From positions 19,064,223 through 19,128,222 of the forward strand of contig NC_069003.1 in NCBI RefSeq assembly GCF_001194135.2: a stretch of 64,000 nucleotides of DNA, written 5' to 3'. Position numbers and translations under genes: made by a program. Positions 27,501-56,199 of the stretch are shown here, one piece after another. This DNA comes from Octopus bimaculoides. Lineage: Eukaryota. The number at the start of each line of letters is the position of its first letter. The stretch's first letter is position 1. The notes under the pieces are model-generated. The model worked only from the letters and a program-made list of their open reading frames with translations, was not told the DNA's origin and did not search any database.

Positions 27501-29989
27501 CATTTATTTAATGCAATTGTAAAAGATTACATCATAATATACAATCCACCATTGTCAGGTAAAATTTTAAACTTCAACCTGACATAGCCAACATTTATTG
27601 GGCTTGTAAAACTTAAATGCATCACTAGTCCAACAAATATTGGTTGATGTTTAAATTCTTACCTGTTGAAAATTTTACCTGATATATTATCATGTAATCA
27701 TTTATGACTGCATTGAATAAATAAAATTCTACTGAAATAACTTGTAAATTTAAAACACCATTTGTGTATACCCTGTGTGTGTGTGTGTGTGTGCATGCAT
27801 GTGTGCATGTATATATGTATATCACTTTACTCTGTATATTGAGCACATTTTCCTTTCACTTGTAAAATCAAATCAAATGTGTATTTTTGTGTGTGTGTGT
27901 GTATAATATAGTTTACAGTTACAATAAAGGCAGGATCAGCAAAAAATATATTCAGTCATATAATATACACAATACTACTAGTTTCACACTTTACACTGCA
28001 TTAAATTGATAGATTTATGTATCGGTACACACGTGGGTATATGTTAAAAATTTCTGGTGTAGATTTGTTAGAGCATTGGACAGAATAACCTCCAAATAGC
28101 TGTTCCAATTCTTTACTCTTTGATTTCAAATCTCACTGGGGTCAACTTTGCACTCTGCATTTCATCCTTTTGGGATTGACAAAGTTAAGTACCAGTCAAA
28201 TACTAAAGTCAGTGGTATCAAGTAACCCCTCCTTTCAAATTTCAGGCTTTCTACTTCTGTTACTAAAAATAATTCTTCCTCAATCTGAATATCATATCTT
28301 AAAATGTTTTTGTTTTTGTCCTCTGTTTTCCAGTTAAAACCATTTCTTTCATCATCATACCGCTGTCCATAGCGTTAATTATTCTGATTGGTTTGACAAT
28401 ACTCTTCTTCAATCGACGACGAGCCACGTAAGTAAAACATTCCATTCTATTCCATTATTATCAATCACAGAATCAGTAGGGCATTGGCAGGCAAAATGTC
28501 TTACAGTATTTCTTCTAGATCAAGTTCTGAGTTTAAACTCCTGTCAAGGTCAACTTTGCCTTTTATCCTTTCAGGGCTGATGAAATAAAATGCCAGTCAA
28601 ATACTAGTAGCAGGGAGGGGATGAAGTTGGCTAAACTCCTTCCTACCTCTCCATCTTTAAATTTCCTGGTCTTGTACCTTATTTAGAACCAGTACCCAAC
28701 AATTGGTTTTTTTGTATTTATGTTGTTTCACTCTCAGAAGTCATGGTGAAACATTGATCCTTTCATGATTATATTTCTAAAGATATAAATTTATTGTTTG
28801 TTATTTTGTATGAATTTTGAAAATAATTAAGAATTTTACTGGGATTTTTGGTCAAATAATTAACTTTGTCATTGCAAAGCTGGTGTTTGGGACATAAGTA
28901 AACAAAAGGTTCTTCTTACATAAATTAATGAAACTAAGTTTTATATTTAACCTTTTCATTATCATATTATGTTGAAAGACAATGCGTTTGTCTCAATTAT
29001 TTTTTTTTATTTAAATAATAAAGAATTTAGTAAAATAACTTATTTAAGCTAGTGTTTGGAACACAGCTAATGAAAAAGTTCTTACATTTAAAGCGTCATA
29101 TAAATTTTTAATCGAAATATAAACATTTTATTAAAAACTGGTAGTTTTGTAATAATTTTTAAATAATTAAGAAAAGAGAGGTAGTAAGTTGAAATCTCTC
29201 TCTTCTGGTTACAACACAAATGATATAGGTACCATGAGGTAATTTGGGCCCTCACTTAACATTTACAAAAATCCTTGTAATTTGAGAAAAGATTAGCTAC
29301 TTTCAGCACTAGACCAGCTCATCTGATCAAAAAACCAAATGAAAATACTTGTTTCTTATATATTGTTTTCACTCAAGTAACATTAATCTCTCTTTACAGG
29401 TCACAACAGTTCAAACATATACGCATTCAAGAAAATGCTAATGAGATTAACAATCCTCTCTATATTCCGGAGACGGACGAACAGGAACTTCACGAACCCA
29501 CCGACGCTCACCAGGTTTGGCTATTGGTTTTCTTGTGTGTGTGATAGAGAGAGGTGGGGAGAGATACCATTTTTATGTATGTATCTCTATCCACTGACTT
29601 AGCATGTGTGTGTGAAAGAGAGAGAAAGTGGAAACTGAAACCCTTTCAATTATGAAGACCAGCCACAATTGGCTTATATTGTGCATTATAAGCTAATTGC
29701 TTAGTGAGGTCTTGCTATTGGGAGTTACCTTTTCAGCAATACCACAAAATAAGGATCAGGTTATGTAATTGTCCTGTGAATAGCTCAACCAGTATAATGG
29801 TCAGTGTGGTCAAGTGCTGTAGCACTTGGTAAATACCAAGTGTTGTATGTCATAACACCTTCTTCGAGGTTTCTAAACATTGGCCTCAAATAAGGATCAG
29901 ACAGATCTGTTTGAGTACAGACTTGCATTTTATGGTTGCATTCCCTTCCTATTGCCAATCACATTACAGCCTCCCTCTTCTCTCTCTCT

Positions 29990-30037
<48 letters not shown>

Positions 30038-33000
30038 AGAGTAATATAACACAAGGATGGAGGATATCAGGCTTTAACAGTAGATCACAATATTTGTTTC
30101 TCCACTGCACACCAGCTTTAAGTTGCTGAGTTTATATTCAAAGACCATTATAGAAGAACATTCTTTCTAAATATTATACAGCAACAAACATGTGTGGATG
30201 CTTCATCAGGGTAGTATATGATTAATTCCTGTTGGATTCTTCTGGATATTCTGGATAAACAATATATATTTCATTCAACCAATCAAGGAGTATACCCCAC
30301 TGTAACTCTTATAACTCTTATGATGTTATTTGTGGTAGCCAAATAACATCATAAGAGCTCTTTCTTACATGCACATTACAAGGTTTTCACCTGATTTATA
30401 CCACACATAACTACAATTGCTGTATAGTTTAGTTAATACCAGAACAGTCTTGTGTGTACATATTTAGTGAAACCTAGAAACTGTGGAAACTAGTGATATT
30501 CTGATCCCCATGTTCACCCCTTGATGAATCCCCTAACTTTATTGCCTATCTCCCTCTCCAACTACCATTTTCTCCATTATCTGTCAAAACTAAATTCTTG
30601 CTACCTGACACCCACACTACACTTTGTGTAGTAACAACACCACTAGCAACCAATTCTTTCTCTCTGCTCCCTTTACCACACACTCAAATCTACAACTAAA
30701 ATTGGTAATTGGCCATGTGTCTCCTCTTTCTCTCTGTTTGTCCATTTTCTTGATGTATGCATCAATGAACAATGACCTGCTTACTTATATCACAGTATTT
30801 CATTAAAACAATGATAGGTCATTTAATTAGTAAGTAGAATACTAAGTAGAAATGTATATTATAAGTTTCACTAAGTATGTATAAATTGTGTATGTGTGCG
30901 TGTGTATATATATACATAGAGAGAGAGAATAAATTTTATAATTATAATTAAGTATAATTACAATAGAGGACTCATAATATGCCTACTTGCTGGAGAGAGA
31001 ACCTAAATCCTCAAGTAAACCACTGAATTACACTGAAATATACAACAGCCCAACAGAAATCGGGCTAGTGAGTAAAGATTCCTCAGAATCATCACAGACC
31101 AAAGCTGTAGAATGAAGAATTGGATATATTTATATCATGATTTCAAATTCTGGCTAAAGCCTTGACTCTCCTCAGTAAATATTGCCATATGAGAGAAATG
31201 AACTCACCTCATTGAAGTCTGTGTCACTACTGAACTGTCCTGTGCAAATTCCTAATGACTTCATTGTATAATATATATATATAGGGAGTAAATATTCAAA
31301 TGAATATCAATAAAGATATCTTTTTTATTATTATTATTATCAGCAGTAAATTTATATATTATTATTTAAATTTACTGCTAATAATAATAATAATAATATC
31401 TTTATGGATATTCATTTGAATATTTACTTCCTGTGTGTGTGTGTATATATTGTATTCTTATTTTATTTATCAAAGGAGGATATATATTTTTATTCAATTA
31501 ATGCCATTAAATAGTCAGTTGTAATTGATTAATTATAAAACTGGTGATTTTCCCCTGTGGACCCAATAAGATATGTGTGTGTGTGATTTAATAAATGCAG
31601 GTTTAAATGTAAGCTACTTTGTTTCATATTTTCACAGTACGTTGATCAGACAAGCTTGCAAGGCTTGCTGTGTACTATCCTGCCATATATATTTAGCACA
31701 TTGGTGGGTATTTTTTACTTCCTGAGGCAGGGAATGTCAGTAAACATGTAATCAGTTGTTTAATTGATCCCATGAATTTTTTTATAAATGTTAGTGTGTG
31801 TGTATATATATGTTGTTTTATGTGTACAGAAGTATGTGTTGTGGTAGTTGTTTACTTTACCTCCAAATCAGACCTGATGAAAATTATTCCCATCCAGCTG
31901 TGGCCATCCATACATGCCTTATTTCAAGATGGTGTTGGGAGTGATTTGGAGGAGTTTTGGCTGTTGTTTCTAGCAGTGACCATATTAAAATTCTCTTACT
32001 GACTTTGTGTGTGTGTTTTTATCAGACCAGCAAGGCCTTCTTTTTTCTCCTTCCCCTCCTCTAGTCTTTAGCTCTCCAGGTAGATTATGGAACTTAAAAT
32101 TTTAACTATCAAAATAATAATTGGTAGAGCATTGGACCAATCAATTTACAACATTTGATTCTGTCCTTTTATGTCCTCCATTCAATTCCAAGCCAAGTCC
32201 ATTCACTTTCATTGTTGCCCTTCTGATATCAGTAAAATTTGTGCAGTAGTGATCAATGTAACTATAACCTAGAAGGGAATGTCCCAGCATGGCCACACAC
32301 AGTATACTGACTGAAACTAGTAGAATATAAAAGAATTATTAAACGGTTCTCTACCCCCACTTTGTTTTTTTCTTTTGATGTTTTCCTATAAAGTAGGAAT
32401 AATAATAATAATAATAATGATAATTCATTTTGTGCATCCCCTGCCCACTGCACATCCTTTATGGCTGTCTTCCACCTGTTTTTCACCTACATTAACTGCC
32501 GCTGTACATACACCTGTACAATGTTTGGTCTAATTGATTCTATTTCCAGATGTTTAACCAACACCGAAGATAGTCAGGCTTCCAGGTAAACTCTTCCGAG
32601 CCCCACCATCACCATCATTATCACCACCACCATCACCCTACTCCCTCCAACTTTATTAGAGAGTATGCAATGATTGTTAGATGTAACAAACACCACCACC
32701 ACCACCACCACCTCATTGTAAACTCAAAAATCTCCCCCTTTTCTCCCATCACCCCATCTGTCTCTATCACTTCACTTCTCTCTCCCCCTCTTTCTCTCTC
32801 TCTCTCTCTCTCTTTCTGCTTTTGAAAAAGTAAAATATTTGTTGTCCTTGAAAACTCTTCTACACTTTTGCATGTTTCTGGCTGTTTACTTACAAATGAC
32901 ATTCTTTGTTCTTGGATGTATGTATGTACGTCCTTATGTATTTATGTATGTGTGTGAAAGGGTGGCAGTGGCTATATAACTTCTGAGACCTTCTAAGATG

Positions 33001-35711
33001 GTGTATGTGTGTGTGTGTAATAAACAATTAACTTATGAACTTATAAGATGCAGTGGGCTCATAGTCGAGTGGGCTAAGTAACACCTTACAGCTTCGTCGG
33101 AGCCTGAAAAGAGATGGTGCTCAATACATAGAGTTGATAATAAAGATTGGCAGAGTCATTAAATTGTCTTACAAAATATCTTGTATTTTTTCGTGCTCTT
33201 TATATTCTGGTTTCAAATCCTCTTGAGATCAACTTAGCCTTTCATCCTTCCATGGTCAATAAAATAAAGTGCCAGTCAAGTACTGGGATCAGTGTTATCA
33301 AGTCACCCACTCTCCTAAATTTCAGACCCTTGTTCCTAAACTGTTGAAAATCTATTTCTTCTGCTCTGTTTGTGTGTATGTGTGACAGTAAGGGTATCTG
33401 GCTGTAAAATAATATCCTAGTAATATGTATTCCTCTAACTCATGCTAACATGGAAAAACAGATGTAAAATAATTGTATTTACATCTAATTTTCAAACAAC
33501 TTACTTGTGGAAATGCTGTCAACCGAAAACTCTACTTACCAGCTGCCATTCAAGAGAGAATGCCACCCCACCCCAACTCACTGATGTGAGGCTCCACCTA
33601 CTGGATTGACTGGCTGGTATTTGATTTTTAAGTCTATTTTGGGATTATCACTATCATTCCAATTTGTGGAGTCGTGCAGGTCTGACTTTCCATATAAGCA
33701 AACAAATACCGCCTTTACACTCACACATAACCTCTCCATCCAGATTTCATCATCTCTTTTCGGCCATTCCCAGTGGTTGTGTCTCTTGACTGTTGACTAG
33801 ATTTCTTTTGAGATATGTGCCTTGGGTGTATATGCGCGTGTGTTTATGTCTGTGTGTTTGTAAAAACAAGTCACCTCAGTTATAGTTTTTTAGTTAGGTA
33901 AATTCTTCAAACATAGCAATGCTTAAATTTAAAAGGCTTATACCACCAACACTTGCTACTGCCAGGAATGCCCCCCTCCACCTCTACTGCACTCTCACAC
34001 ACACACACACACATACACAGAGTTCTGCCAAAACTAAAGTAGTCCTTACCTTATAAATGCAAAGATTTATAGTTTGTTTTTTGTTTTTTCTTTTGTACTT
34101 CTGCTAAACTAAAAATCAACCACATAGGCTGTAGACTTCCTTTAAAGGTAAAAAAAATTGAGAGTTCATTTATGTGATTTTCACCTGCACTGTTAGTCTT
34201 CAAGTAGGCTGCTTCTATGATTCCCAAACTGTCTAGTAGTATTATTAGCAGTAGTGTTAGTCGGTGTTGTTATTGTTGTTGTTACAAGTTTCTTTTTTTT
34301 TTTTCTCTTTTTTTTTCTTCGTTGAACGTGGTGCAGCACCTGGTCGTGTCAACTCCTACCACACCATCCAACCCATGCCAGCATGGAAAACGGATACTAA
34401 ATGTTGATGATGACAATGATGATGATTCTGTTTGGTTAATTAGTTAATTGGTAAATATTCAGGATTTAAAAACTGAACTCCTGTTTTCAATCCTTGCTTA
34501 TTAACCGCATAAATCATTTAATCGTTCAGCCATCAACTGCTGTATTAATAAAATTGCTTTAGCCATCAATGTCTCATCTTCACAAATCCATCCTTCTCTC
34601 TGATCATTATGCTACATATAGCCACACCTCATGCTTAATTCAGAAATATGTAAATCATCCTTAAGTAATATGTTTAATTACAGTTGTTGATGTTTTTCTA
34701 CTCTTTTCTTTGACAAATAAACCTGATTTAACCTTTAGCACACTGTATTTTCTCTAGAGTTGTTTCCCTAGCCACTGCTGTGTTACTACAGGGGAGAAAA
34801 CTCATACAGTGAGGTGATGCATGTACAGTGTGCTAAAGGTTAAAGAAACTAGAGACTTTGTCAGAAAACTGAAGCTGAATTCAAGACAAAAATAATTGAT
34901 ATATGACTGTTTTAGATTGTAGTGTGTATATGAGTACACTATACACACACATGCACACAGGTGAGGATCCCAATCATTTGGGTTCAATCCTACTGCATGG
35001 CACCTTGGACTTTAGCTCTGAGCTACCTAAAAGCACTTGTGGGTAGATTTGGTAGGTAGAAACGTTAGCACGCTGGGCGAAATGCTTAGCGGTATTTCGT
35101 CTGCCGTTATGTTCTGAGTTCAAATTCCACCAAGGCCGACTTTGCCTTTCATCCTTTCAGGGTCGATAAATTAAATACCAGTTACGCACTGGGGTTGATG
35201 TAATCGACTTAATCCCATTGTCTGTCCTTGTTTGTCCCCTCTATGTTTAGCTCCTTGTGGGCAGTAAAGAAATAAGAAACTGAAAGAAGCCCATTATGTA
35301 TGTTTCTTTACATTTGCCTTCTCAGAAAATCAGGGGACTGTAGCCAGAGTTTTACTGTTATCACCCTGTCCAGGACACGTGAAACAGGAGGGACATCCAC
35401 CTGTGAAACAATATATATCTAACCCATGCTCGTATGGAAAAAGCTGATATAAAAATGAGCAAGTGAGTATGAATACATATCTGTACCGTGATTTCTTGGT
35501 GATCTCAGTGATCTATCTTTTGTTTACCCAACTAAAGAAAAAGTCAGCTGAAGATCACTATGTCCAAAAACCTGGACACCAGCATGAAAGCACACTGATA
35601 TGGGGGTAACAGATAAGCAGTATCCTACAAGACATCACAAGTACACAGTCATTACACCATATGTATGTGTATATCTATGTACATATATGTAGATATACAT
35701 GTGTGTGTGTA

Positions 35712-35765
<54 letters not shown>

Positions 35766-35781
35766 CATACACACACATGCA

Positions 35782-35814
<33 letters not shown>

Positions 35815-36039
35815 GTAAAATACAGAGTACATGTAATACACATTAGAGATGCCCATAAAAGGACATCTAACCTGGCTGCTCCTTCTAGTGGGTTAGATGT
35901 CCTTTTATGGGCATCTCTAATGTGTATTAAATATACACTGTATTTTACATGAATAATATATAGTCTGTTGACTAATTTTCTTCTCGCTACACCACTGGTA
36001 GTAAATTAAATTTCTTAATTTTTTTGCTACCCTAAGACT

Positions 36040-36070
<31 letters not shown>

Positions 36071-37135
36071 AGGGATTCTCTCATTGTGAACCACAGATGA
36101 GAATTCAGTAAAATAAAGCGGTAACCATGTTCTTTGGTCACGAATGTGTCTCTCGAGGCTATCTGGTGCCTTGTAAACCTTTTAGCAAAGGGAACAAGTT
36201 GAGGACTCAGTTTGCTTGAGTTCTTTTTTTTTTGTGTGTGTGTGTGTTTTCTTGAGTGGACAACAAGGCCTGCTTTGCTTTGCGCCACAAAAGCACAACG
36301 ACAGGTAAAGTTTCCATTTAGAGGAGCAGTGCCTTCATACTTGCACAAAGTTGGTCCCAATGTTGGAGTTGACTTTGCTGAAATCTTTGAACGGAGGAGA
36401 AACAGGAATGGTACCAGGTCCTGCATTCTGATGCTTTGTTTTCTCAGGAAGAAAAGGGAATGTTGCATCTCTTCAGATTGTCTTTTAGTTTGTCTCTGAA
36501 TCGCAAGAGTGGCCTTCTAACTGATATTCCTGCTTTTATATATCTTATTAATATTCTTAAATCTCAGATATTTTTACTTTTATTTTATGTATTTATATAT
36601 ATGTATAGGGCAAATGGGACTCCTTAGCCGTAGTGATGATGGTCTTCTTAGATGGTGTGCATCTACTTTCTCATAGGGCAGTCTGGGTTTTGTTGTTTTT
36701 GAGCAACTAGACTAGGAGAAGGCCACTCTGATCTCAAATCTACAATTGATTTAGCATGTGACACACCTGTACAGGTAAATGCTTTTTTGATGGAGAGTGT
36801 GTGCATTGTGCTGCACGAGCAATGACCACTATAAACAATAGATATATAAGCAAAACTAAGATGTATAATTGTTTTCTACGATATTCTCCATTTTAGAACA
36901 CTTTAACCCACAAGTCTATATATACACCAAATTGATGTCCAAGCAAATTTTTACATATATTGTTTTCCATGTCTCTACATCAGCATTTCTCAATCAGGGT
37001 TCCATGAGAAAGAGTGATATAAGCTAATGCTAATTTCATGATTGTAATATTACTATACATGCACAACATATTATTGGTTATTGTAATATAGACATCATCC
37101 TATCTAACCTATTATATTATCAAAAAATATAACAA

Positions 37136-37172
<37 letters not shown>

Positions 37173-37827
37173 ACATAAACTATGATGAAAATATGAGAAT
37201 GATATAGTATATAATTTTTCTTGTGCAGGGGTTCCTTGAGACATGTAGTTTATTTTAAGGATTACGCAAAGGTAAAAAGGTTGAGAAACACTGCTCTACA
37301 TGATCTATATGTAGTCTTCAGGGCTGTGGAAAACTTGTCTATTTTCTAAACAGTGTTTCTTGACTGTTTATATGTATGTACGTTTATTTATCTGTGGAAT
37401 GTTGAGTATATACATACACCAAGATACCTCTATGTTCTTCGAAAGCAAGCAGATAACTTTATGTGGATGCTCTGATATTTAACATTGATCAATCATGTCA
37501 CAGATTGACCCCCTCTATCCCTCCCTCTCTCTTAACTTTGATGCAAGTTATAAGACATTCTTAGAGATAACCCTCAATATCTATGGCAAGTCTTTCTCAT
37601 ACTCACACTCCTTGTTTGTTCCTTGTTTCCATTCTCCGCTGCCAACTCTTGTCTCATAATCTCAAATTTTCACTTCAGTCTCATTTTTCAGCATGTCATC
37701 TCTCTCCTATCCATTCCCCATCAATCTGACTGCTATTCATATTAGCCAGCTTGTCACCTCATTTCTTTCATCTACCATCTGGCCCCTTTCATCTGTAATG
37801 AAAATTAACACTACCTATCTATCTCTC

Positions 37828-37901
<74 letters not shown>

Positions 37902-40900
37902 GTCTTATTTCTATATCTTCTTCCTCTGTACAAAATGTCACAGTTCTAAAAATCACTAACTCAAAACCTCATATTTGTTATATTACAAAATCTAGTGAAA
38001 TAAATAATTATATAAACTTTGCATAATTATTGTAACTAACTGCATTTGTAATCATTAAATCTTCGTCTTTCAGGTAAGTAAAGTGTGTGTGGAAGGGGTT
38101 ACTTTGACATTTCTATTTTGTGTATTTTCTTTACAGCTGCAGAACCCACCATGAATAATAACTTTGACAGATTTTATCTGTTGGATTTTTTTTTTTTTTT
38201 TTTATAAATTGATATGTAGACACACATGTGTGTTTGTGTGTATGATGTATGTTGTGTTGACCATACACACACACACATACACAGAACTACACAGTTTTGT
38301 GTGCCTGTGTGTATGTACATTTATGTACACATGTTTGTATAAATGTATATTTGTATTGTATATGTATATATATGTATGCATATGTCTATTTGGATGTATA
38401 TGCATAAATATATGTATCTACATATATATGTATCTGCATATATATGTATCTGCATTTATTTGCATGCATATGTATGTACAGGGGTTAGACTAAATAATGG
38501 AAACACCTTGTTAAATTGTGGTTTTATTTAATACAGAGTTGGTTCACCTTTGGTACCAAATTATTGACTTGTAAAGGTTCTGAACAGTTGTTAGGGATAA
38601 TCAAGATCCAGTGATACTTGGGGCTAGTACAAGTGGTCTACTTAATGCTGACATCTTTGTACTAATTATTGAATAATATTAGCTATGTGAATCTACACAT
38701 TATCATCGTGAAAGTTTGTTCTACCAGTGTGCTAAGCGTTTAATGTCTAGCACACTGATTTATCCCTAGAATAGTTTCCCCTGCCACTACATTATTTTTG
38801 AGGGAACACTAGACATGAACACCTACTGTTTTAAAACTGTTATAGCTTTCATTGTATTGTGCATATAGACTTGACTCTTTTGTATATTAATGAAATGCAT
38901 TAGTACTTTCCTTAAATCAGCCAGCCATGGATAATAGTATCCACTCGGTACATCATTCTCAAGATAACTGTAAACACAGTTTATGTCCTCCTCATCACCT
39001 CAAATAATTTTACCATGCTATCTTCCTGAGTAAATCCTTTAAAATCATCATCTGAGTTAGAATCAAACAAGATTTCTTTGAGAAAAGCTTCAAATGCAGG
39101 AGCAGCCATTTTCGTTCAGTAAAAAATCCAAAAAACTAAGTTACCTCATGGTTAGGATATAAACAATGAAAATGGCATCAGAAAATGGAGCCTCAAGTAC
39201 TGGAAATAAAGGTAACATTGTGTTTATTTAAGCACCCTTATCATGGCAACAAAATGTGCCTGCAGCTACAGGAGAGAAAACTCATGGGTGACAAGAGTGT
39301 GAAGAAGGTTAAAAAACAATGTTTGTACCATAGCATGGACATGATCAGAAAAAATACTTGTATAATCCTTGCCATTAACTCTGCCATGTAGAACAATTAA
39401 AGGATCAGAGAGTCTCATGATATGACTGCCCAAATCATCTCAAAGCCATCTCAATGCTTTATCTTGAAGCAGGGGAGAAAAGGGTGAATGATGATTTTAA
39501 AAAATTACATTGAGACATTGACCACATCAGGTAATCCAGACCAGAGGTTCTCAACTACGGTCTGCATGAGATTTTGTTGTTAAAATTTATCTACAATAAA
39601 TTGGTTATACAGTACTTCTACAGTACACTAAATATTTTAACAATTTTTTTTTATTCAATTCCTAATAATATTTAATTATAAAAATATGATTTTTTTAAAC
39701 ATTGAATTGCTATAAAGTTCATCCAAGTAAAATAGGAATCAAAGGGGTTCATAGGGCAAACAGTGATTAAGAAACATTGGTCTAGATCTATATTTTTCAA
39801 TTTATCCAGAGGGACAGAAGGGGCTTAGCAATTGCAGCCCTCACATGGTAGCCAACTTTATGGAGATCATGAATGTATTTAGTTGACAGAATTGGCATGG
39901 TTTTGCTTTAGCTCTGCTCTCACTTATACCACCATAGTTCAATGGTTTTCAGACACAATATGGTTCTTTATTATTCAGTCAGTTTTTGTGAGCTTTGCAT
40001 TCCATCCAGAAGGGAACAGTAAAAGGCCTAACAGTATGATAGTTTTCCCGTTCCATGGCCACATGTGGTTACACCTCCAGCAGCAACTTGGTGTGTTCAG
40101 CTCTGCTGCTCATCAGGCTGAGAAAAGTAAACTGTCACGGTATTGGTCACTCTCTGACAGGTTTATGGTCGAGCCTGTGGCAGTGGAGTTCTTGGCCCCC
40201 ATATCCCTGCTCACCACTATCAGGGCAGAGAAGGCTGTCCACAAGTACAAACCCCATGAGTCAGAATAGCTGTTCCAGCACATCTCCTTCACCATCCTCT
40301 AGGGTAACGCCTTTTCCAATTTGTCTGCTGGGACCATGGGGCAGTCTGAATTTCAAGAACTTGTACCTTCCACTCCTTAATGTAAAGTTACTCCATATAT
40401 ATGTGTATTTCTATCATAGAAATCCAGAATTATGCTTGTTGGAGTTGTCGTTACCTTGGAATGCCATTAAGATTCTAGAGACTGTGGCCTTCAAAACATT
40501 AAACAATTCTACAGTTTTAGTGACTGAAGCTCCAACCATCCATTTTCTAACAATCTGTCTTCTTTGGAAATCAGATAGGACCTGCATTTTAATTTATTTG
40601 AATGTTAATGTCTGTAATAAAAAAAAAAGGAAAAGAAAACCAGAGGGCTATATCATAAAATATAAGGCATAAACACAATGCATAAGAACACATATATACA
40701 AATTAGAAAAGTTTTGGATATATTATTACATTGCTGATAGAAAAACAAAATAGTTCAATAAAAAGTGGTGTTTTCATTACTTTGTCCAAACACTGTATGT
40801 ATGTGTGTATATGTGTATGAATATACATCCACATAAACACACTTCTTTTATCCACAAGCAAGAAGCATTTTCAGCCCTTGCACAGAATATTATCTATTTA

Positions 40901-43191
40901 TACAAAACTGGTGATTCCTGTTAATCGTTACTCAGAGTTTCTTACATGATGTGTTTCTTCAAGTTTAGCATGAATAGCAAAGAAGTGAATCACTACCTTT
41001 GCATAAATATAAATAATAATAGTAGTCGTAGTCGTCGTCGTCCATGGGTGGAATTTTTAAATATTTTAATGCATTGTTCTGCATGTTTCCATAAATCACA
41101 CATTTCTTACAATCGTAGTTTGTATTCATGGGATGGTTATTGTACAGTCCGTAGTGGCCATGGACATCAGGTGGATCATAGTTCATGTATTCATTTACTC
41201 AGATGAACTGAAGGTTGTTCATCCAATTTTCACCAACAAAAAGGCTGATTGGGGTATATGGGCATTTGTGTGTGTATTTGATAGGGAGGAGTGTGTGGTG
41301 ATGTTAGACTTGTTTCATTATTTGTGTATGCAGATGTCAGGGGTGGATAGAATAGTCCATTCGTTTGACTTTAGTCACAGTAGGTGCCTCCTCAGTGAAT
41401 TCAGATGTAGTAGTGTCAGGAAGTGCAGCTATTCTGTGGTTGAAGTTCATCGTCTGAGTTGACAAATGATGTTCTTCTCTTAAAGTGTCCTTTTAATTAA
41501 TTTTGAATAGGGAAATAATGGCATAGAACCAACTGGTCTATAATAAAAAATGCTACACCATTGCACGTGTGCAACTTATGCCTAGAGGAAACCCTGGAGA
41601 TCATAACATCCAGTGAAAACATAATTAGTAGACACTCCAAAGTAATTATATCATGTAAACATAAAAGTAAGGCATCATTTCTAGAATTCAAAAAGAACAT
41701 TTTGAAACAGTAAAACACTAAATATCATTAGCATCTAATGGAACAAGAGAAGAGCATATAAACCAATTAAACAAAATAACCATTATTTCCCTATGCTATA
41801 TGCTATATCATTGTACCACCAAAAGTAATTAAAAAGACACTTTAACCCTTTCATTACTGTATTTATTTTGAGATGTTCTGTGTTTCTTTCAATTATAACA
41901 AAGAATTTAGTAAAATAACTTAGTTATCATTAAGCTAGTGTTAGGAGCATTAATAGTGACTAAGGTTTGGTGGAAGATTTTGATTTAAAACTTATGAGAG
42001 CAAGATATTTGTACTCAGAGCTAGAACCGAATTGGTAACGAAAGGATTAAGGGGAAAACATCATTTGTCAACTCAGACAATGAACTTCAACCACAGAATA
42101 GCTGCACTTCCTGACACTACTACATCTGAATTCACTGAGGAAGCATCTGCTGTGACTAAAGTCAAACAAATGAACTATTCTATCCACCCCTGACATCTGC
42201 ATACACAAATAATCAAACAAGTCTAACATCACCACACACTCCTCCCTACCAAATACACACACAAATGCTCACATACCCCAATCAACCTTTTCATTGGTGA
42301 AAATTGGATGAACAACCTTCAGTTATACATTTGTTGCTTCCAACATTAATGCCATATCACCTAAGGAAATGAATACATGAACTATGATCCACCCAATGTC
42401 CATGGCTACTACAAACTGTACTGTAACCATCCCATGAATACAGACTATGATTGAAAGAAACGTGTGATTTGTGGAAATGTGTAGAGCGATGCATTAAAAT
42501 ATTTATAAGTTCCATCCATGGATTATTATTATTACTATATTTATCCTACATTATATCAGCACAGCTCAATGCAACCCTATGAAACTGAAATTGCAAGTTG
42601 ATAGTCATTAGACTGCAGCTGACATAATAAAATAGCTTTTGTATGCCTACTCAAAAATGTTTTCCATAAACACACAGATGTGTACATTTATTCATATATA
42701 GATATAGATATATGTATATATATATCAATGCATAAAAAATGTGTACAATAATTAAGATTTGGGGAGTGAAATTTTAAAACTCTTTAATATGATTATCATC
42801 ATCATTTAGGATAGTGGATTAAGAGAATCATTGAAGCATTGGAAGGAAATGCTTTCCATTATTAATTTCAGATTTTTATGGTGTGAGAGTAAATCTCAGA
42901 TTTGAGGTCAACTTTACCAATTGGGATTGATAAAATAAGTACCAGTCAAGTGCTAGATATCAGTGGTATCAACTAACACCTTTCCCCTTAAAAAATTGCT
43001 AGCCTTTTGTGCCAAAATTTGAAAACATCATTGTTATTATTTTTCTTTTCTAGTCGGCTTATGATGGAGCCTTCGACACATTCCCACATGACAGCACGAC
43101 AACCCATAAAGAAAGTGAACGTCACCAATTGTTACGAGAAGTCCGTTACTATGGAAATAGAGACACCCGGCCAAATGTATCATTTGCTTAA
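1167..43191 (+). CDS. LRP1: LRP1-like LDL receptor-related protein, 3' part (18 coding exons, 2555 nt, about 850 aa; 5' part lies upstream of the window)
   Basis: All exons below join with GT-AG boundaries and matching phases into one ORF: EGF-cbEGF-YWTD propeller-EGF array-TM-NPxY tail. Several EGFs between the last propeller and the TM match LRP1/LRP1B architecture rather than LRP2 or the vitellogenin receptor. Confidence 0.88.
1706..1916. mobile_element. hAT MITE, same family (another copy at 39542-39779)
   Basis: CAATGGTTCTCAACC...GGTTGAGAAACACTG, internal sequence shared with the 39542 copy, whose flanks ATCCAGAC/GTCTAGAT resemble the NTCTAGAN target. Confidence 0.7.
2705..2836 (+). CDS. 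LRP1: LRP1-like exon B, Ca-binding EGF: [44 protein letters not shown]
   Basis: tttcag|AT...AATG|gtaaga, 132 nt, phase 1-1, D-x-N-E-C and C-x-N-x2-G-G-Y-x-C consensus. Confidence 0.95.
5048..5136 (+). CDS. LRP1: LRP1-like exon C, propeller start: [30 protein letters not shown]
   Basis: ttgtag|GC...ACA|gtcagt, 89 nt, phase 1-0 fits both neighbours. Confidence 0.85.
6429..6680 (+). mobile_element. tRNA-derived SINE family A (other copies ~770-940 -, 11953-12115 +, 19845-20035 -, 45670-45975 -, 50690-50840 -, 62110-62300 +)
   Basis: A-box GGCTGTGTGGTAAG, B-box GGGTT(C/T)AGTCCC, conserved body gggcaagtgtcttctactatagcc...gaaagaagccc, microsatellite tail. Confidence 0.8.
8087..8230 (+). CDS. LRP1: LRP1-like exon D: [48 protein letters not shown]
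   Basis: ttccag|CAC...CAT|gtgagt, 144 nt, phase 0-0, degenerate blade plus KR at the position of the LRP1 processing loop. Confidence 0.88.
9764..9966 (+). CDS. LRP1: LRP1-like exon E, YWTD blades ([14 protein letters not shown]...AIAVDP)
   Basis: tactag|GAT...CAA|gtaagt, 203 nt, phase 0-2, canonical YWTD. Confidence 0.96.
10073..10296 (+). CDS. LRP1: LRP1-like exon F, YWTD blades (IFWTN...[17 protein letters not shown])
   Basis: ttttag|G...CAAG|gtaaaa, 224 nt, phase 2-1, preceded by a 106-nt intron. Confidence 0.96.
11323..11940. other. assembly gap of 618 N (others at 12367-12376 and 43720-43822), adjoining (TA)n
   Basis: N runs. Confidence 1.
13331..13510 (+). CDS. LRP1: LRP1-like exon G, last blade ([12 protein letters not shown]...[10 protein letters not shown])
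   Basis: ttccag|TT...GTTG|gtgagt, 180 nt, phase 1-1, matches the P-x2-I/L-D-V-F-E-x2-I-Y blade pattern. Confidence 0.94.
14882..15077 (+). CDS. LRP1: LRP1-like exon H, post-propeller EGF plus start of next EGF
   Basis: ttttag|TG...TGTAT|gtaagt, 196 nt, phase 1-2. Confidence 0.93.
16841..16951 (+). CDS. LRP1: LRP1-like exon I, EGF: [36 protein letters not shown]
   Basis: ctccag|A...CAG|gtaaca, 111 nt, phase 2-2. Confidence 0.93.
17137..17554. repeat. ~410-bp fold-back element
   Basis: Arms 17142-17319 and 17326-17550, 6-nt loop, ~48-nt bulge in the right arm. Confidence 0.9.
18989..19569 (+). mobile_element. non-autonomous Helitron
   Basis: A|TCTATATAAATAAAATTCTGTCTGTCC 5' end, CTAG|T 3' end, subterminal hairpin, no TSD. 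Confidence 0.65.
20121..20260 (+). CDS. LRP1: LRP1-like exon J, EGF: [29 protein letters not shown]...CRCQEGFT
   Basis: tttcag|T...ACAG|gtaact, 140 nt, phase 2-1. Confidence 0.94.
20365..20587. mobile_element. second TTAA MITE family (TTAACCCTTTAGCATT...AATGCTAAAGGGTTAA); copies at ~2857-3078, 8351-8593, 9270-9460, 18340-18540, 25850-26232 (two), 51234-51440
   Basis: Shared ~220-bp body with CCCTTTAGCATT-type termini bounded by TTAA. Confidence 0.75.
20648..20884 (+). CDS. LRP1: LRP1-like exon K, two atypical EGF-like modules plus start of a third
   Basis: ccttag|GC...AAAG|gtaaaa, 237 nt, phase 1-1, Cys-rich and open. Confidence 0.92.
22697..22813 (+). CDS. LRP1: LRP1-like exon L, EGF: [39 protein letters not shown]
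   Basis: tttcag|CT...ACAG|gtaaga, 117 nt, phase 1-1. Confidence 0.94.
23648..23768 (+). CDS. LRP1: LRP1-like exon M, EGF: [40 protein letters not shown]
   Basis: tgctag|GT...CAA|gtgagc, 121 nt, phase 1-2. Confidence 0.93.
25240..25362 (+). CDS. LRP1: LRP1-like exon N, EGF: [40 protein letters not shown]
   Basis: catcaag|T...CAG|gtaaag, 123 nt, phase 2-2, AAG acceptor after a long pyrimidine tract. Confidence 0.92.
26611..26678 (+). CDS. LRP1: LRP1-like exon O, end of last EGF and juxtamembrane: [22 protein letters not shown]
   Basis: ttacag|T...ACT|gtaagt, 68 nt, phase 2-1. Confidence 0.92.
28334..28427 (+). CDS. LRP1: LRP1-like exon P, transmembrane: [31 protein letters not shown]
   Basis: ttccag|TT...CAC|gtaagt, 94 nt, phase 1-2, about 23 hydrophobic residues followed by RRR stop-transfer. 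Confidence 0.94.
29400..29514 (+). CDS. LRP1: LRP1-like exon Q, cytoplasmic: [39 protein letters not shown]
   Basis: ttacag|G...CAG|gtttgg, 115 nt, phase 2-0. FKHIRI...EINNPLY parallels human LRP1 FQHQRM...EIGNPTY (recalled). Confidence 0.93.
31283..31432. repeat. ~150-bp AT-rich palindrome
   Basis: ggagtaaatattcaaatgaatatc / gatattcatttgaatatttacttcc outer arms, agcagtaaattta / taaatttactgct inner arms. Confidence 0.88.
32550..32585 (+). CDS. candidate 36-nt cassette exon ([11 protein letters not shown] in phase 2-2; stop-containing in phase 0)
   Basis: ctaat branch point, tctatttccag acceptor, CAG|gtaaac donor. Confidence 0.35.
35064..35280 (+). mobile_element. young tRNA-derived SINE family B nested inside a family A SINE
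   Basis: B-box GAGTTCAAATTCC, CpG-rich body, AGAAAC duplicated at 35058-35063 and 35275-35280. Confidence 0.75.
35813..35950. repeat. 138-bp hairpin with 39-bp perfect stem
   Basis: 35834-35872 is the exact reverse complement of 35891-35929; 18-nt loop; further 21 bp with 3 mismatches. Confidence 0.95.
36230..36470 (-). mobile_element. possible LINE C-terminal zinc-finger remnant
   Basis: [22 protein letters not shown] resembles the C..C...S..GL..H.R.H ends of RTE-like ORF2; no splice context. Confidence 0.35.
36981..37293. mobile_element. hAT (Charlie/Buster-type) MITE
   Basis: TIR CAGCATTTCTCAATC / GGTTGAGAAACACTG, perfect 8-bp TSD CTCTACAT on both sides. Confidence 0.85.
38032..38079 (+). 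promoter_or_regulatory. candidate recursive splice (ratchet) site: branch point, pyrimidine tract, CAG|GTAAGT
   Basis: gtaACTAACtgcatttgtaatcattaaatcttcgtctttCAG|GTAAGT, with no AG between branch point and CAG. Confidence 0.55.
39995..40340 (+). mobile_element. CRE-clade non-LTR retrotransposon remnant (C-terminal restriction-like endonuclease region)
   Basis: [12 protein letters not shown]...[17 protein letters not shown]...PVAVE...[13 protein letters not shown] matches the CRE pattern RPDG...AA..AE..K..KY..L...P.AVE...QR.S.A.QRGNA. Confidence 0.65.
41003..42544. repeat. 1.5-kb inverted duplication (arms about 500 bp, 258-bp spacer)
   Basis: 41003-41521 versus 41780-42544; ORF-track peptides 41133+ and 42262- are near-identical mirror images. 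Confidence 0.92.
41846..42046. mobile_element. piggyBac-type MITE with TTAA TSD (related copies ~24871-25077, ~28950-29150)
   Basis: TTAA-CCCTTTCATTAC...GTAACGAAAGGA-TTAA; empty site present in the paralogous arm at ~41480. Confidence 0.85.
43054..43191 (+). CDS. LRP1: LRP1-like terminal exon: [45 protein letters not shown]
   Basis: ttttcttttctag|TCG, phase 0 matches exon Q. ERHQLL acidic dileucine parallels LRP1 EKRELL. TAA at 43189-43191. Confidence 0.85.
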   Translation, partial: SAYDGAFDTFPHDSTTTHKESERHQLLREVRYYGNRDTRPNVSFA

Positions 43192-43453: not shown

Positions 43454-43822
43454 TCAAACGAAAATGATGGACTCTAAGGAATTTTGTGGAAGCATTTTGG
43501 AAAGTTAGCAATGACAAAAGGAAGAAATGAAGGTTTGAGAAAGAAAGAAAGAATGAGAGAGAGAAAAAAAGGAAGAGAAGGAAAAAAAGAGAAAATCAAT
43601 GTGCTGATTTCCTTCTTTCTAAAATAAAAGATTAAAAAAATAAAAACATTATTATAATAATAATAATCTTTAATTAACCATTAAATAATTTTCAGAGGAA
43701 ACAACAAAAAAGAAGAAAANNNNNNNNNNNNNNNNNNNNNNNNNNNNNNNNNNNNNNNNNNNNNNNNNNNNNNNNNNNNNNNNNNNNNNNNNNNNNNNNN
43801 NNNNNNNNNNNNNNNNNNNNNN

Positions 43823-43854
<32 letters not shown>

Positions 43855-46512: not shown

Positions 46513-47443
46513 TGAGGCTCAGTTGAAAAGTTCATAGGCTGACCAAGATTCTCTCATGAAATGTGACCGAATGAAGTTTATTTTTCAACATAGTCCCCTT
46601 TGTAGTCTGCACACTTCTTCCATCAGTGTTGCAGTGCTTGGATCCCATTGGTGAAGCGTTCATCCTGTTGGTCAAAAAAGTCATCAACAGCATATATGAT
46701 GTCATCATCACACTGTCACTGGTTCCTAGCCAAGTGTTTTTTTCATGTAGAACAAATGATAGTCAGATGGGGCCAAATCAGGAGAATAGGGACAGTGATC
46801 AACCAGTTCAAAGCCACAGTCACCCACAGCAGCCATTGAAACCAAGAACTTGTGTGCTGGAGCATTGCTCTGATGAAACAAGACCTCTTTCATCAGTTTT
46901 CCTGGGCGTTTGATCTTGATAGTCTCTGATAACTGCCTCAGCAAGTTGGTATAATATTCACCATTGATGGTGTGACTCTTTTGAAGATAGTCAATAAGCA
47001 CAATGCCTTTTGCATCCCAAAACAACTGTGGTCATCCCTTTCCCTGCAGATGAAATGACCTTTGCCTTCTTTGGAGGGGTGTTTCCACTGCATGGGTTGT
47101 CTTTCTGTCTCTGGCTTAAAGTGATGAACCCAGCATTCATTCCAAGTTAGGAAACCAGTTGGATCTACTTCAAGCAATGTCAGATTTTCCAGCAATCATG
47201 TCAGCATGAATGTCGTTGGGGGCTAAACCCTTTTTCTACAGGTACTTCATAATGCTGTGATGGGAAATTTTGTCCATTTTCAAGAAAAGTTACTAGTTAG
47301 CTTTGAAGTCCTTTTTAAACAGTCAGGTGTCAGTTTACCTGGAAAGAAAGAATGCAGTTATTAACAAGCAGTTGAAATTAATGCATGCAAGATTTCACAG
47401 CTTTACCATCACTCCTTCATATGAACTTTTCCACCCACCCACA
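46513..47443 (-). mobile_element. internally deleted, decayed mariner (D34D type)
   Basis: WVHH-F-KPET, MFWDAKG, HQSNAPAH, YSPDLAPSDYHLF motifs; degenerate TIRs sharing AAAAGTTCATA; TA at both ends. Confidence 0.92.
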
Positions 47444-49519: not shown

Positions 49520-50345
49520 TTCTTATTATTAAGACAGCAATCTGGCAGTGTCAAGTGCCACCAAGATCGACTTAGCCTTCCTTTTGGTGTTGGTGATGGT
49601 GGTGGAGTGTCAATAAAATAAAGTGCCAGGGAAGTACTGGGACTGGTGGTATCAACTAACCCCCACCTCTCAAAATTGTTGGCTTTGTGCCTAAATCAGA
49701 AACAATTATTATTATTGATAATAATAAGCAGGGTGGAGAGCTGGCAGAACCATTAACACACCATGCAAAATACTCAGTGGCATTTCATCTGTCTTTATGT
49801 TCTGAGTTCAAATTCTGCCACAGTTGATTTTGTCTTCCATCCTTTTGAGGTTGATAAAATAAATACCAGGCAAGCACTGGAGTTGATGTAATCAACTTAC
49901 CCCATTCCTCGAAATTGCTGGCATTGTGCCAAAATTTGAAACCATTACTACTGTTAATAAAAATGCTGATAATAATTCAGTTATGTGAAGGAGAGAGACT
50001 TCTCTCTCCTTCATTCTGAGATCAAATCCCACCAAGGTCAATTTTGTCTTTCATCTTTTTGGGGTCAATGAAATAAGTGGAATATTGGGGTTGATGTAAT
50101 CGACAAGCCCCCCCTCACCCCAAATTTCAAGCCTAATATTGTTATTAAGGCAGCAAGCTGGCAGTCATTTGAGCCTCAGGTAGAATAACTCACAGTATTT
50201 GTTTGAGCTCTTTACATTCCAAGTTCAAATCTCACCATAGTTACCTTTGTCTTTCATCACTCTGAGGTTGATAAAGTAAAGAACCAATCAAATACTGGGG
50301 TTGATTTAATCCACTAATCCTACTCCCACTTTTACCTAATTCAAA
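49520..50345 (+). mobile_element. second head-to-tail cluster of about 5 SINE family B copies
   Basis: Same unit and ATT-rich junctions. Confidence 0.75.
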
Positions 50346-53710: not shown

Positions 53711-54120
53711 TGAATAATAACAGTAAGATATACAAAATGTCTAAATAAAAGATGAAATGGTTACTGCTTGATAAGGTCTCATCTGGCACCAAATAGCATG
53801 TGCACACACACTCTCTCCCACCCACTTCTCTTCAGTTCTCAAATATAGTTATTTTGTTTGAATGCCCTCTACCAATGACAGCACCTTTGCCATGAATTTG
53901 GTGCAATTTCTAATTAACAAAAATCAGCAACTGTTTTTCTTGCATGCACATGAATATACACATACATTTTATTTTTGTTGGGTCAGTCTCTTGCTACTCT
54001 GAGTTTTACCTGTGAGTCTGCCTGAAAATCCTATGTACTCACAGGTGAGCAACAGACTGACTCAACCAAAATAAATATCATTAATCTATACTATAGCATC
54101 GAGTACACTTTTTCCTAGCA

Positions 54121-55690: not shown

Positions 55691-56199
55691 AACACAGTTT
55701 TATTTTTCCAAGAATGTTTATAAGTTTGCTGTGTACAGTTGTAATAGTAGTTGTTTCTCCCTGTAAAAGGTGACTGTAGTGAAGCAATGTTACCCTATGG
55801 TGAACAACTGTCATAATCTATTAACATACATTGTTTACTGTTGTACACTGACTAAGATGGCAGTCTGTCATCAATTGCACAACAAATAATAAATTAATAA
55901 TCTAGGAATAAACAAATGACTGTGATTCCTCTGCCATATGTAATTAGCTTTTGAAGTACATCATTATGAAACATGGTGTATAAATCCTACATGGCCACCA
56001 TGCCTGACACAAGTTGACTGAAGAAGGGAAATGACATTAAATTATCAGTACAACAAACATTATTATGCAATCCAGCCTCATATTTTCTTCCATAATTATC
56101 AAAAGAAACTTGCACATTGTTATTTAGCTACCATAAATTATATGGTAAAACATACTTGAAAGCAGTGTGTGTATTTGTAGATGCGTGTGTGTGTGTATA

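What the first reader, a model, noticed from the sequence alone, without database searches (positions are those of the whole stretch)
38032..38079. Textbook recursive-splice (zero-length exon) site in the longest intron
Seen: ACTAAC branch point, AG-free pyrimidine tract, then CAG immediately followed by the perfect donor GTAAGT. It would divide the 13.5-kb intron 29515-43053 into about 8.6 and 5.0 kb. Established: this juxtaposed 3'ss/5'ss is the ratchet-point signature of Drosophila and long vertebrate introns. Inference: recursive splicing in a cephalopod, possibly acting as a switch between tail isoforms. I am not aware of described mollusc examples.
Basis: partly seen in the sequence, partly recalled or inferred. 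Interest (0 to 1): 0.72.

Follow-up and report, generated by a model that had tools for sequence, protein, structure and literature searches.

The report
Unproven recursive-splice-like motif in octopod intron
A sequence that looks like a 'recursive splice site' really does sit in the long last intron of an octopod LDL-receptor-related gene. Its acceptor half is ordinary, chance could plausibly produce it, and no RNA or cross-species data could be reached to show it is used.

Summary
The host intron is real. Two orthologous proteins, one from a Logan RNA contig and one an Argonauta hians LRP1B-like model, join the exon ending at 29514 directly to the terminal exon at 43054. The site would split the 13,539-nt intron into 8,559 and 4,980 nt.

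"Textbook" overstates it. The donor half is perfect. The acceptor half scores 15th of 19 against this gene's own acceptors. About 18% of all CAGs on this strand score as well. Stronger acceptor-like motifs lie 63-69 nt downstream. No convincing downstream donor exists for the cryptic RS-exon that fly recursive splicing needs.

Sites at least this good are expected 0.06-0.24 times per 64 kb, or about 0.01-0.08 if the AG-free zone and a branch motif are also required. Two other perfect CAGGTAAGT 9-mers in introns of the same gene lack any acceptor.

Conservation and RNA evidence could not be tested. I rate chance or an unused cryptic site at about 0.6 and a working ratchet point at about 0.2. 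A tail-isoform switch has no support.

The parts
38035..38040 (+). ACTAAC branch-point-like motif (branch A at 38039, 34 nt upstream of the AG|GT junction)
   Evidence: Read directly. ACTAAC occurs 13 times on the + strand. Only 0.3% of CAGs on this strand combine a comparable acceptor, a 30-nt AG-free zone and a CTAAC.
37996..38071 (+). AG-free zone upstream of the candidate acceptor
   Evidence: The nearest upstream AG is at 37994-37995. Real acceptors of this gene have 22-97 nt. The local sequence is A/T-rich and G-poor, which partly explains the absence of AG.
38060..38070 (+). Short pyrimidine tract tcttcgtcttt (10 of 11 Y), with TT at -5 and -6
   Evidence: Over -20..-4, 12 of 17 bases are pyrimidines. 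The acceptor log-odds score is 0.72, against -4.0 to 9.3 (median about 4) for the 17 acceptors confirmed by orthologues (18 comparison sites with the 13566 decoy); the rank is 15th of 19.
38071..38079 (+). CAG|GTAAGT core: acceptor AG (38072-38073) abutting a consensus donor (38074-38079)
   Evidence: The donor 9-mer score is 8.77, the highest in the window. It is one of three CAGGTAAGT on the + strand.
29515..43053 (+). Host intron, 13,539 nt, the last intron of an LRP1B/LRP2-like gene
   Evidence: tblastn of orthologue P0001 maps exon Q and the terminal exon. The tails of P0001 and P0078 join the two exons directly. Reading phases fit (phase 0 to phase 0).
29400..29514 (+). Exon Q (cytoplasmic tail, NPLY motif). 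It ends in CAG and has a weak donor, CAG|GTTTGG, at 29515
   Evidence: The donor score of 1.51 is among the weakest in the gene. Splicing to 38074 would regenerate CAG|GTAAGT.
43054..43191 (+). Terminal coding exon (45 codons plus TAA) with a strong acceptor, tttttcttttctag
   Evidence: Acceptor score 5.08, with 15 of 17 Y.
38117..38142 (+). Two stronger acceptor-like motifs 63-69 nt downstream (ttttctttacag|C at 38137; ctgcag|A at 38143)
   Evidence: Scores 5.8 and 4.1, against 0.72 for the candidate.
38228..38233 (+). Best possible downstream donor for a cryptic RS-exon: cat|GTGTGT, 154 nt after the junction (weak). The only other is aaa|GTGTGT at +9
   Evidence: Scores 2.13 and 1.44; every other GT within 320 nt scores below 1.
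37818..37897 (.). (TC)n(TA)n microsatellite bounding the unique ~290-nt island that holds the site
38312..38478 (.). TATG-rich low-complexity arrays bounding the island downstream, followed by a Tc1/mariner-like terminal repeat at 38468-38509

Best explanation
Most likely this is a fortuitous juxtaposition of an average acceptor-like sequence and a perfect donor-like 9-mer, deep in the T-rich last intron of an octopod LRP1B/LRP2-like gene.

On this reading the intron is normally removed in one step, from the weak donor at 29515 to the strong acceptor at 43053. The site at 38073/38074 is silent, or at most a sporadically used cryptic site whose products leave no trace in mRNA.

Shown here: the motif, the intron, the relative strengths of the sites, and the chance rates. 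Inferred: that the site is not used.
For: 1. The acceptor half is unremarkable. It scores 0.72 and ranks 15th of 19 against the gene's own acceptors. 17.6% of all CAGs on this strand score as well, 6.1% also have a 30-nt AG-free zone, and 2.4% also have a yTrAy motif.

2. Two other perfect CAGGTAAGT sites lie in other introns of the same gene (10517, 16583). They have no pyrimidine tract and cannot be ratchet points. Given three such 9-mers, the chance that at least one has an acceptor this good is about 0.44, or 0.17 with the AG-free zone and 0.07 with a branch motif (derived).

3. The expected number of composite sites this good is 0.16-0.24 per 64 kb by Markov simulation and 0.06-0.12 by empirical coincidence. 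This matches the roughly 0.1 per 100 kb background on complementary strands in Shepard et al. 2009 (PMC2773006). A genome of gigabase size would therefore hold hundreds to thousands of such sites by chance.

4. A generic combined score puts two antisense sites at or above the candidate.

5. No good downstream donor for an RS-exon is present. Fly recursive splicing needs one (PMC8605326).

6. Stronger acceptor-like decoys lie 63-69 nt downstream. The top-scoring AG|GT on the strand (13566) is also a decoy according to the orthologues.

7. In flies only 6% of introns above 11.3 kb are recursive, and the mean recursive intron is 45 kb (10.1101/006163).
Against: With every feature required (donor, acceptor, 30-nt AG-free zone, branch motif) the chance expectation per intron is only about 0.005-0.007, and it is lower still with an exact CTAAC.

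No antisense site passes those joint thresholds.

TT at -5/-6, an intron above the fly minimum, segment sizes within the fly range, and an upstream exon ending in CAG next to a weak natural donor are all what a real ratchet point would show.

Shepard et al. found ratchet-point motifs enriched in sea urchin and insects, so a mollusc could use them too.
Confidence: 0.6

Rival explanations
1. This is a working zero-length-exon ratchet point. Exon Q's weak donor (CAG|GTTTGG) is first spliced to the acceptor at 38073, using the branch A at 38039. That removes 8,559 nt and regenerates a perfect donor, CAG|GTAAGT. The regenerated donor is then spliced to the terminal-exon acceptor at 43053, removing the remaining 4,980 nt. 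The mRNA is the same as after one-step splicing.
For: The core is perfect, with TT at -5/-6. The ACTAAC sits at a normal branch distance and is followed by a 76-nt AG-free zone.

This is the only site on either strand that passes the joint thresholds.

The intron (13.5 kb) is the longest in the window and lies above the fly minimum of 11,341 bp. Both segments fall within the fly range of 2.6-63.6 kb.

The site lies 63% of the way along the intron, which is roughly central.

The natural donor is weak and the upstream exon ends in CAG.

Ratchet-point motifs are enriched in non-vertebrate deuterostome and insect long introns.
Against: Fly ratchet points have 3' splice sites stronger than ordinary ones (PMC6110457; 10.1101/006163). 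This one falls in the bottom third for its own gene.

There is no credible RS-exon donor 30-150 nt downstream.

There is no conservation or RNA evidence.

A 13.5-kb intron is at the extreme low end for flies, and far below the typical size for mouse or human recursive introns.

Acceptor-less twins of the 9-mer occur in the same gene.
Confidence: 0.2
2. The acceptor at 38073 opens a cryptic, non-productive 'poison' or decoy exon. One version would be 38074-38227, closed by cat|GTGTGT. Another would start at the stronger acceptors at 38137 or 38143. Occasional inclusion would give a truncated tail and a transcript prone to decay.
For: Several acceptor-like motifs cluster within 70 nt. Weak GTGTGT donors follow at +9 and +154. 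The read-in frame from exon Q stops after 26 codons. A 154-nt exon would shift the frame.
Against: Neither orthologous product contains such an insert. The candidate donors are weak. A perfect donor directly at the acceptor would normally out-compete them, which is the logic of recursive splicing.
Confidence: 0.1
3. The perfect 9-mer is one of several intronic U1 snRNP binding sites. They would be kept on the sense strand for a role other than splicing at that position, for example suppressing premature cleavage and polyadenylation in long A/T-rich introns. On this view the adjacent acceptor-like sequence is incidental.
For: Three CAGGTAAGT sites lie on the sense strand against 0.15-0.3 expected, and none lies on the antisense strand. 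None is at a mapped exon end. Two have no acceptor.
Against: The sample is three sites in one window. The GTAAGT hexamer itself is not enriched (15 sense, 13 antisense). No cephalopod data exist on such a mechanism; this rests on my general knowledge of vertebrate U1 telescripting.
Confidence: 0.07
4. The GTAAGT closes a normal coding exon that starts upstream, or the AG opens an alternative terminal exon that gives a second tail isoform.
For: None beyond the splice-site-like letters themselves.
Against: There is no AG in the 76 nt upstream. All three frames of 37996-38073 contain stop codons. The frame that would continue into the terminal exon has a stop five codons before the junction. No AATAAA or ATTAAA occurs in 38074-39200. 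Both orthologues have a single tail with no insert.
Confidence: 0.02

Closest known systems
Drosophila intronic ratchet points / zero-nucleotide exons (Ubx, kuz, osp, fz, luna; Hatton 1998, Burnette 2005, Duff 2015)
   Same: The consensus (Y)nNCAG|GTAAGT is matched at all core positions, with TT at -5/-6. The host intron is the longest in the window and longer than 11.3 kb. Both segments exceed 2.6 kb. The upstream exon ends so that a strong donor would be regenerated.
   Different: The pyrimidine tract is short and the acceptor is below average for its gene, whereas fly ratchet points are stronger than ordinary acceptors. No RS-exon donor is visible. Conservation and RNA intermediates are unknown. 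The host is a mollusc, in a genome far larger and more repeat-rich than that of the fly.
Vertebrate recursive sites with RS-exons (Sibley 2015; later human and mouse studies, PMC6110456, PMC8797253)
   Same: It has the juxtaposed AG|GT with a reconstituted 5' splice site, inside a long gene of the kind expressed in specialised tissues.
   Different: Vertebrate sites lie mostly in introns longer than 50-100 kb and depend on a defined RS-exon with its own donor. Here the intron is 13.5 kb and no such donor is evident.
Zero-length exon / pseudo-exon resplicing in rat alpha-tropomyosin (Grellscheid and Smith 2006, as summarised in PMC2773006)
   Same: A 3' splice site is immediately followed by a 5' splice site inside an intron that is not exceptionally long.
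   Different: That case was shown experimentally and is linked to suppression of a pseudo-exon. Nothing of the kind was shown here.
Ordinary cryptic or decoy splice-site motifs in long introns
   Same: The frequency is compatible with the background of about 0.1 per 100 kb. Similar or stronger acceptor-like decoys lie nearby, and acceptor-less donor 9-mers occur in the same gene.
   Different: The combination of a perfect 9-mer, an exact ACTAAC and a long AG-free zone is rarer than a typical decoy.

Membership tests
Intronic ratchet point (zero-nucleotide recursive splice site, Drosophila type) | AG|GT core with a strong donor (GTAAGT-like) directly after the acceptor AG | tested here: met
   CAG|GTAAGT at 38071-38079. 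The donor score is the highest in the window.
Intronic ratchet point (zero-nucleotide recursive splice site, Drosophila type) | TT at positions -5 and -6 (196 of 197 fly ratchet points) | tested here: met
   ...gtcTTtcag|. The criterion comes from 10.1101/006163.
Intronic ratchet point (zero-nucleotide recursive splice site, Drosophila type) | Prominent pyrimidine tract, with a 3' splice site stronger than ordinary acceptors | tested here: not met
   The tract is 11 nt and 12 of 17 positions are Y. The score of 0.72 ranks 15th of 19 against this gene's acceptors. 17.6% of all CAGs on the strand do as well. The scoring matrix is an approximate generic one, not MaxEnt.
Intronic ratchet point (zero-nucleotide recursive splice site, Drosophila type) | Located in an unusually long, constitutively removed intron, with segments of kilobase size | tested here: met
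   The intron is 13,539 nt, the longest of the 16 mapped in the window. The segments are 8,559 and 4,980 nt. Two orthologues show the same exon join. This is the low end of the fly range of 11.3-133 kb.
Intronic ratchet point (zero-nucleotide recursive splice site, Drosophila type) | Cryptic RS-exon with its own downstream donor (about 50 nt in flies) | tested here: inconclusive
   Only weak GTGTGT donors are present, at +9 and +154 nt. Nothing scores above 2.2 within 320 nt. The requirement is known from flies and vertebrates only.
Intronic ratchet point (zero-nucleotide recursive splice site, Drosophila type) | Sequence conservation of the core above flanking intron in related species | not testable with these tools
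   No cephalopod genomic DNA could be reached. Exact-ORF look-ups failed. The Argonauta protein and the 87-aa genomic ORF were not returned by the permitted search. The metagenome scan found nothing.
Intronic ratchet point (zero-nucleotide recursive splice site, Drosophila type) | RNA intermediates: exon-to-ratchet-point junction reads, recursive lariats, saw-tooth coverage | not testable with these tools
   No read-level RNA data are available. The only transcript found (L001) is a mature mRNA of a distant relative.
Cassette or alternative terminal exon boundary | An open reading frame continuous with flanking exons, an upstream acceptor for a donor-closed exon, or a poly(A) signal for a terminal exon | tested here: not met
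   Stops occur in all frames of 37996-38073 and no AG occurs for 76 nt. No AATAAA or ATTAAA occurs within 1.1 kb downstream. The orthologues have no insert.
Copy of a repeated element carrying the motif | Other copies of the 37900-38200 segment | tested here: not met
   No other copy exists in the window. The only similarity is a 31-nt, 84% match to the 16583 9-mer region, E = 0.19. A genome-wide copy number could not be tested.

The most novel reading that the evidence does not exclude
The site is a genuine, constitutively used zero-length-exon ratchet point. That would make it the first recursive splice site shown in a mollusc, or in any lophotrochozoan. It would work on an intron of only 13.5 kb with a modest pyrimidine tract and no obvious RS-exon. 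It would imply that recursive splicing predates the protostome split and follows looser rules in cephalopods than in flies.
Probability: 0.2. Interest if true: 0.55.

Novelty: new member of a known kind. Interest (0 to 1): 0.25.

Why it matters
Recursive splicing has been demonstrated in flies, mouse and human, and was examined in lungfish. Motif enrichment has been reported in other insects and in sea urchin.

The library held no paper on recursive splicing in a mollusc or cephalopod. Cephalopods combine very large, repeat-rich genomes with unusual RNA biology. A proven ratchet point there would extend the known phylogenetic range and allow a test of whether long-intron handling is ancestral.

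A single motif match cannot carry that weight. Its practical value is as a concrete, primer-ready candidate, and as a prompt for a genome-wide sense-versus-antisense census of such motifs.

Tried and rejected
1. Searching the protein collection with the spliced tail found nothing. A 684-aa C-terminal query found only one orthologue, a Logan transcript, P0001. Proteins over about 1,200 aa do not appear among the hits.

2. The representative search found the Argonauta hians orthologue (P0078) and an 87-aa genomic ORF (P0079) that runs from the exon-Q equivalent into the intron. Neither was returned by the permitted homology search, so their DNA could not be fetched. P0079's contigs are at most 1,136 nt in any case.

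3. Exact look-ups of window ORFs 40055-40672, 38164-38493 and 56229-56657 found nothing on record.

4. A scan of JGI metagenome contigs with the tail found no relative.

5. Repeat origin was rejected. 37900-38200 is unique within the window.

6. A structured or known RNA was rejected. There is no Rfam match anywhere in the window.

7. A normal exon or an alternative terminal exon was rejected.

8. Extra tail exons in the intron were considered. NPxY-coding open stretches at 37569, 51126 and 54027 occur at about the chance rate (my estimate, about two expected) and are absent from the orthologues.

9. One literature search was badly constructed and uninformative.
Full report
**What is there**

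The + strand reads gtaACTAACtgcatttgtaatcattaaatcttcgtctttCAG|GTAAGTaaag.
- ACTAAC lies at 38035-38040, with the branch A at 38039, 34 nt from the junction.
- The nearest upstream AG is at 37994-37995.
- CAG is at 38071-38073 and GTAAGT at 38074-38079.
- T is present at both -5 and -6.

The 'pyrimidine tract' is only the last 11 nt, tcttcgtcttt. Positions -20 to -12 are A-rich.

**The gene and the intron**

The window carries the 3' part of an LDL-receptor-related gene.
- The YWTD-propeller exons match human, mouse and other LRP2 best, at residues 4140-4269.
- EGF exons, a transmembrane exon (28334-28427) and a tail exon with NPLY (exon Q, 29400-29514) follow.
- A 684-aa query found one orthologue in the word-indexed collection, P0001. 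It is encoded on a 2,517-nt Logan RNA contig, SRR27666078.
- tblastn of P0001 maps twelve collinear exons and ends with exon Q and an exon at 43054-43191.
- The exhaustive representative search added P0078, accession GAB1610066.1, 'LRP1B-like isoform X1' of Argonauta hians. It is 65% identical over the tail.

In both orthologues the exon-Q equivalent is followed directly by the terminal-exon equivalent:
- P0001: ...DAQK-PLHFDDTYDTF...
- P0078: ...ATHQ-SLASDGSFGPLDTF...
- Window: ...DAHQ|[10 protein letters not shown]...

The phases fit (phase 0 to phase 0). So the intron 29515-43053 (13,539 nt) is well supported. It has no coding exon inside it in two relatives. It is by far the longest of the 16 introns mapped in the window; the others range from about 0.1 to 6.9 kb. 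The candidate site would split it into 8,559 and 4,980 nt.

Exonic DNA identity to the Logan transcript is only 68-75%. That relative is therefore distant. Argonauta is closer.

**How good is the site?**

I scored splice sites with an approximate generic metazoan matrix, which is my own and not MaxEnt.

*Donor half.* It is perfect. The 9-mer scores 8.77, the best in the window.

*Acceptor half.*
- It scores 0.72, with 12 of 17 pyrimidines.
- The 17 acceptors confirmed by orthologues range from -4.0 to 9.3, with a median near 4. The candidate ranks 15th of 19 when the 13566 decoy is counted.
- Of the 987 CAG trinucleotides on this strand, 17.6% have an upstream sequence scoring at least as well. 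6.1% also lack AG for 30 nt. 2.4% also have a yTrAy motif.
- Two stronger acceptor-like motifs lie 63 and 69 nt downstream, scoring 5.8 and 4.1.

*RS-exon donor.* Current fly work holds that intronic recursive splicing needs a cryptic RS-exon of roughly 50 nt with its own donor (PMC8605326). Here the only candidates are aaa|GTGTGT at +9 and cat|GTGTGT at +154. Both are weak.

[quoted passage not shown] On that criterion the site fails.

*Criteria the site passes:*
- TT at -5/-6, as in 196 of 197 fly sites.
- An intron longer than 11,341 bp.
- Segments within the fly range of 2.6-63.6 kb.
- An upstream exon ending in CAG, so that CAG|GTAAGT would be regenerated.

The natural donor of the intron, CAG|GTTTGG, is weak, scoring 1.51. 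This is suggestive but not diagnostic.

**Chance**

The 9-mer CAGGTAAGT is expected 0.15-0.3 times per strand per 64 kb under Markov orders 1-4. Expected numbers of composite sites at least as good as the candidate:

| Features required | Markov simulation, per 64 kb | Motif coincidence, per 64 kb |
|---|---|---|
| Donor and acceptor | 0.16-0.24 | 0.06 (GTAAGT) to 0.12 (GTRAGT) |
| Plus 30-nt AG-free zone | 0.06-0.08 | 0.02-0.04 |
| Plus yTrAy branch motif | about 0.03 | 0.008-0.016 |

- Per 13.5-kb intron, the simulated values are about 0.04, 0.015 and 0.006.
- The thresholds were set at the candidate's own values, so these figures are optimistic.
- They agree with the published background of about 0.1 ratchet-point motifs per 100 kb on complementary strands. 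The sense-strand figures there are 2.2 in fly and 0.54 in sea urchin (PMC2773006).
- In a gigabase-scale genome that background means hundreds to thousands of chance sites.
- A generic summed score ranks the candidate second of 192 AG|GT on the sense strand, but two antisense sites equal or beat it.
- With joint thresholds on both halves, no antisense site passes.

**Decoys in the same gene**

CAGGTAAGT occurs three times on the sense strand (10517, 16583, 38071) and never on the antisense strand.
- The other two lie in introns and are not at any exon end supported by the orthologues.
- They have purine-rich upstream sequence, so they cannot be acceptors.
- They are not copies of one repeat.

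Whatever explains this small excess, it raises the local background for the rare half of the motif. Given three such 9-mers, at least one would have an acceptor this good with probability of about 0.44. The figure is 0.17 with the AG-free zone and 0.07 with a branch motif.

**Other readings tested**

*A normal exon closed by the GTAAGT.* This is excluded. No AG occurs for 76 nt upstream, and all three frames of 37996-38073 have stops.

*An alternative terminal exon opened by the AG.* This is unlikely. The read-in frame from exon Q gives 26 codons and a stop. No AATAAA or ATTAAA follows within 1.1 kb. Neither orthologue shows a second tail.

*A repeated element.* The 37,900-38,200 island is unique within the window. 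It sits between a (TC)n(TA)n microsatellite and TATG-rich arrays, and a Tc1/mariner-like terminal repeat lies 400 nt downstream.

*A known RNA family.* No Rfam family matches anywhere in the window.

**What could not be done**

The two decisive tests are conservation in orthologous introns and RNA intermediates. Both were out of reach.
- The collections with DNA access hold no cephalopod genomic contig that I could address.
- The only transcript found is a mature mRNA.

**Verdict**

The functional claim remains a hypothesis.

| Reading | Probability |
|---|---|
| Chance or unused cryptic motif | about 0.6 |
| Working ratchet point | about 0.2 |
| Cryptic-exon boundary | about 0.1 |
| Intronic U1 site with an incidental acceptor | about 0.07 |
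| Ordinary exon or terminal-exon boundary | about 0.02 |

The 'tail-isoform switch' has no support. No paper in the searchable library describes recursive splicing in molluscs or cephalopods. If shown, this would be a first for the phylum, but it would still be a new member of a known kind.

Noticed in passing
window 10517-10525, 16583-16591, 38071-38079 (+): The perfect U1-complementary 9-mer CAGGTAAGT occurs three times on the sense strand and never on the antisense strand, against 0.15-0.3 expected per strand. None lies at an exon end supported by orthologues. The gene's real GTAAGT donors are preceded by CAA, TAT or CAC instead.
   Followed up: partly
window 41041-41483 and 42047-42522: A 476-nt inverted repeat (85% identity, arms about 560 nt apart) lies inside the same terminal intron. 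It is probably a foldback or long-TIR transposon. In the pre-mRNA it could form a long hairpin about 0.5-2 kb upstream of the terminal acceptor.
   Followed up: partly
window 42921-43044 (also 33183-33340, 35052-35231, 14553-14740, 28490-28597, 49609-49945, 58755-61003): A SINE-like repeat family has many copies in the window. One copy ends within about 10 nt of the terminal exon, so it contributes the ACTAAC at 42972 and part of the sequence upstream of that exon's acceptor.
   Followed up: partly
window 29515-29520: The natural donor of the 13.5-kb intron is weak (CAG|GTTTGG, mismatched to U1 at +3, +4 and +6). Its acceptor at 43053 is strong.
   Followed up: yes
window 56192-57480 (-), 46726-47195 (-), 38468-38509: Two Tc1/mariner-type transposon remnants are present (DDE_3 and Transposase_1 domain hits). 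The first has terminal repeats. A solo terminal-repeat-like sequence of the same family lies 400 nt downstream of the candidate site.
   Followed up: partly
window 13566: This is the best-scoring AG|GT on the sense strand (acceptor score 7.07), 56 nt after the donor at 13511. It is not an exon start in either orthologue, so it is a strong acceptor-like decoy.
   Followed up: yes
window 38117-38142: Two acceptor-like motifs stronger than the candidate's lie 63-69 nt downstream of it (ttttctttacag|C and ctgcag|A).
   Followed up: yes
window 54003-54071: A short open stretch encodes ...LPENPMYSQ with an AG upstream and cacag|GTGAGC downstream, reminiscent of an LRP-tail NPxY micro-exon about 11 kb past the stop codon. 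The number of NPxY hits is at chance level and the orthologues end at the 43189 stop, so this is probably fortuitous.
   Followed up: partly
window ~11300-12000 and ~43720-43830: Runs of N (731 in all) mark assembly gaps. One lies inside the intron between the propeller exons at 10073-10306 and 13301-13510. One lies about 0.5 kb past the stop codon.
   Followed up: no
P0079 (87-aa ORF on Logan contigs of at most 1,136 nt): A genomic ORF from a decapodiform-like relative reads through the exon-Q equivalent (…NPLYMPEMDESDIPESSDAQK) into the intron (VFTFFF…). This shows the exon boundary is in the same place in that lineage. The DNA could not be fetched.
   Followed up: partly
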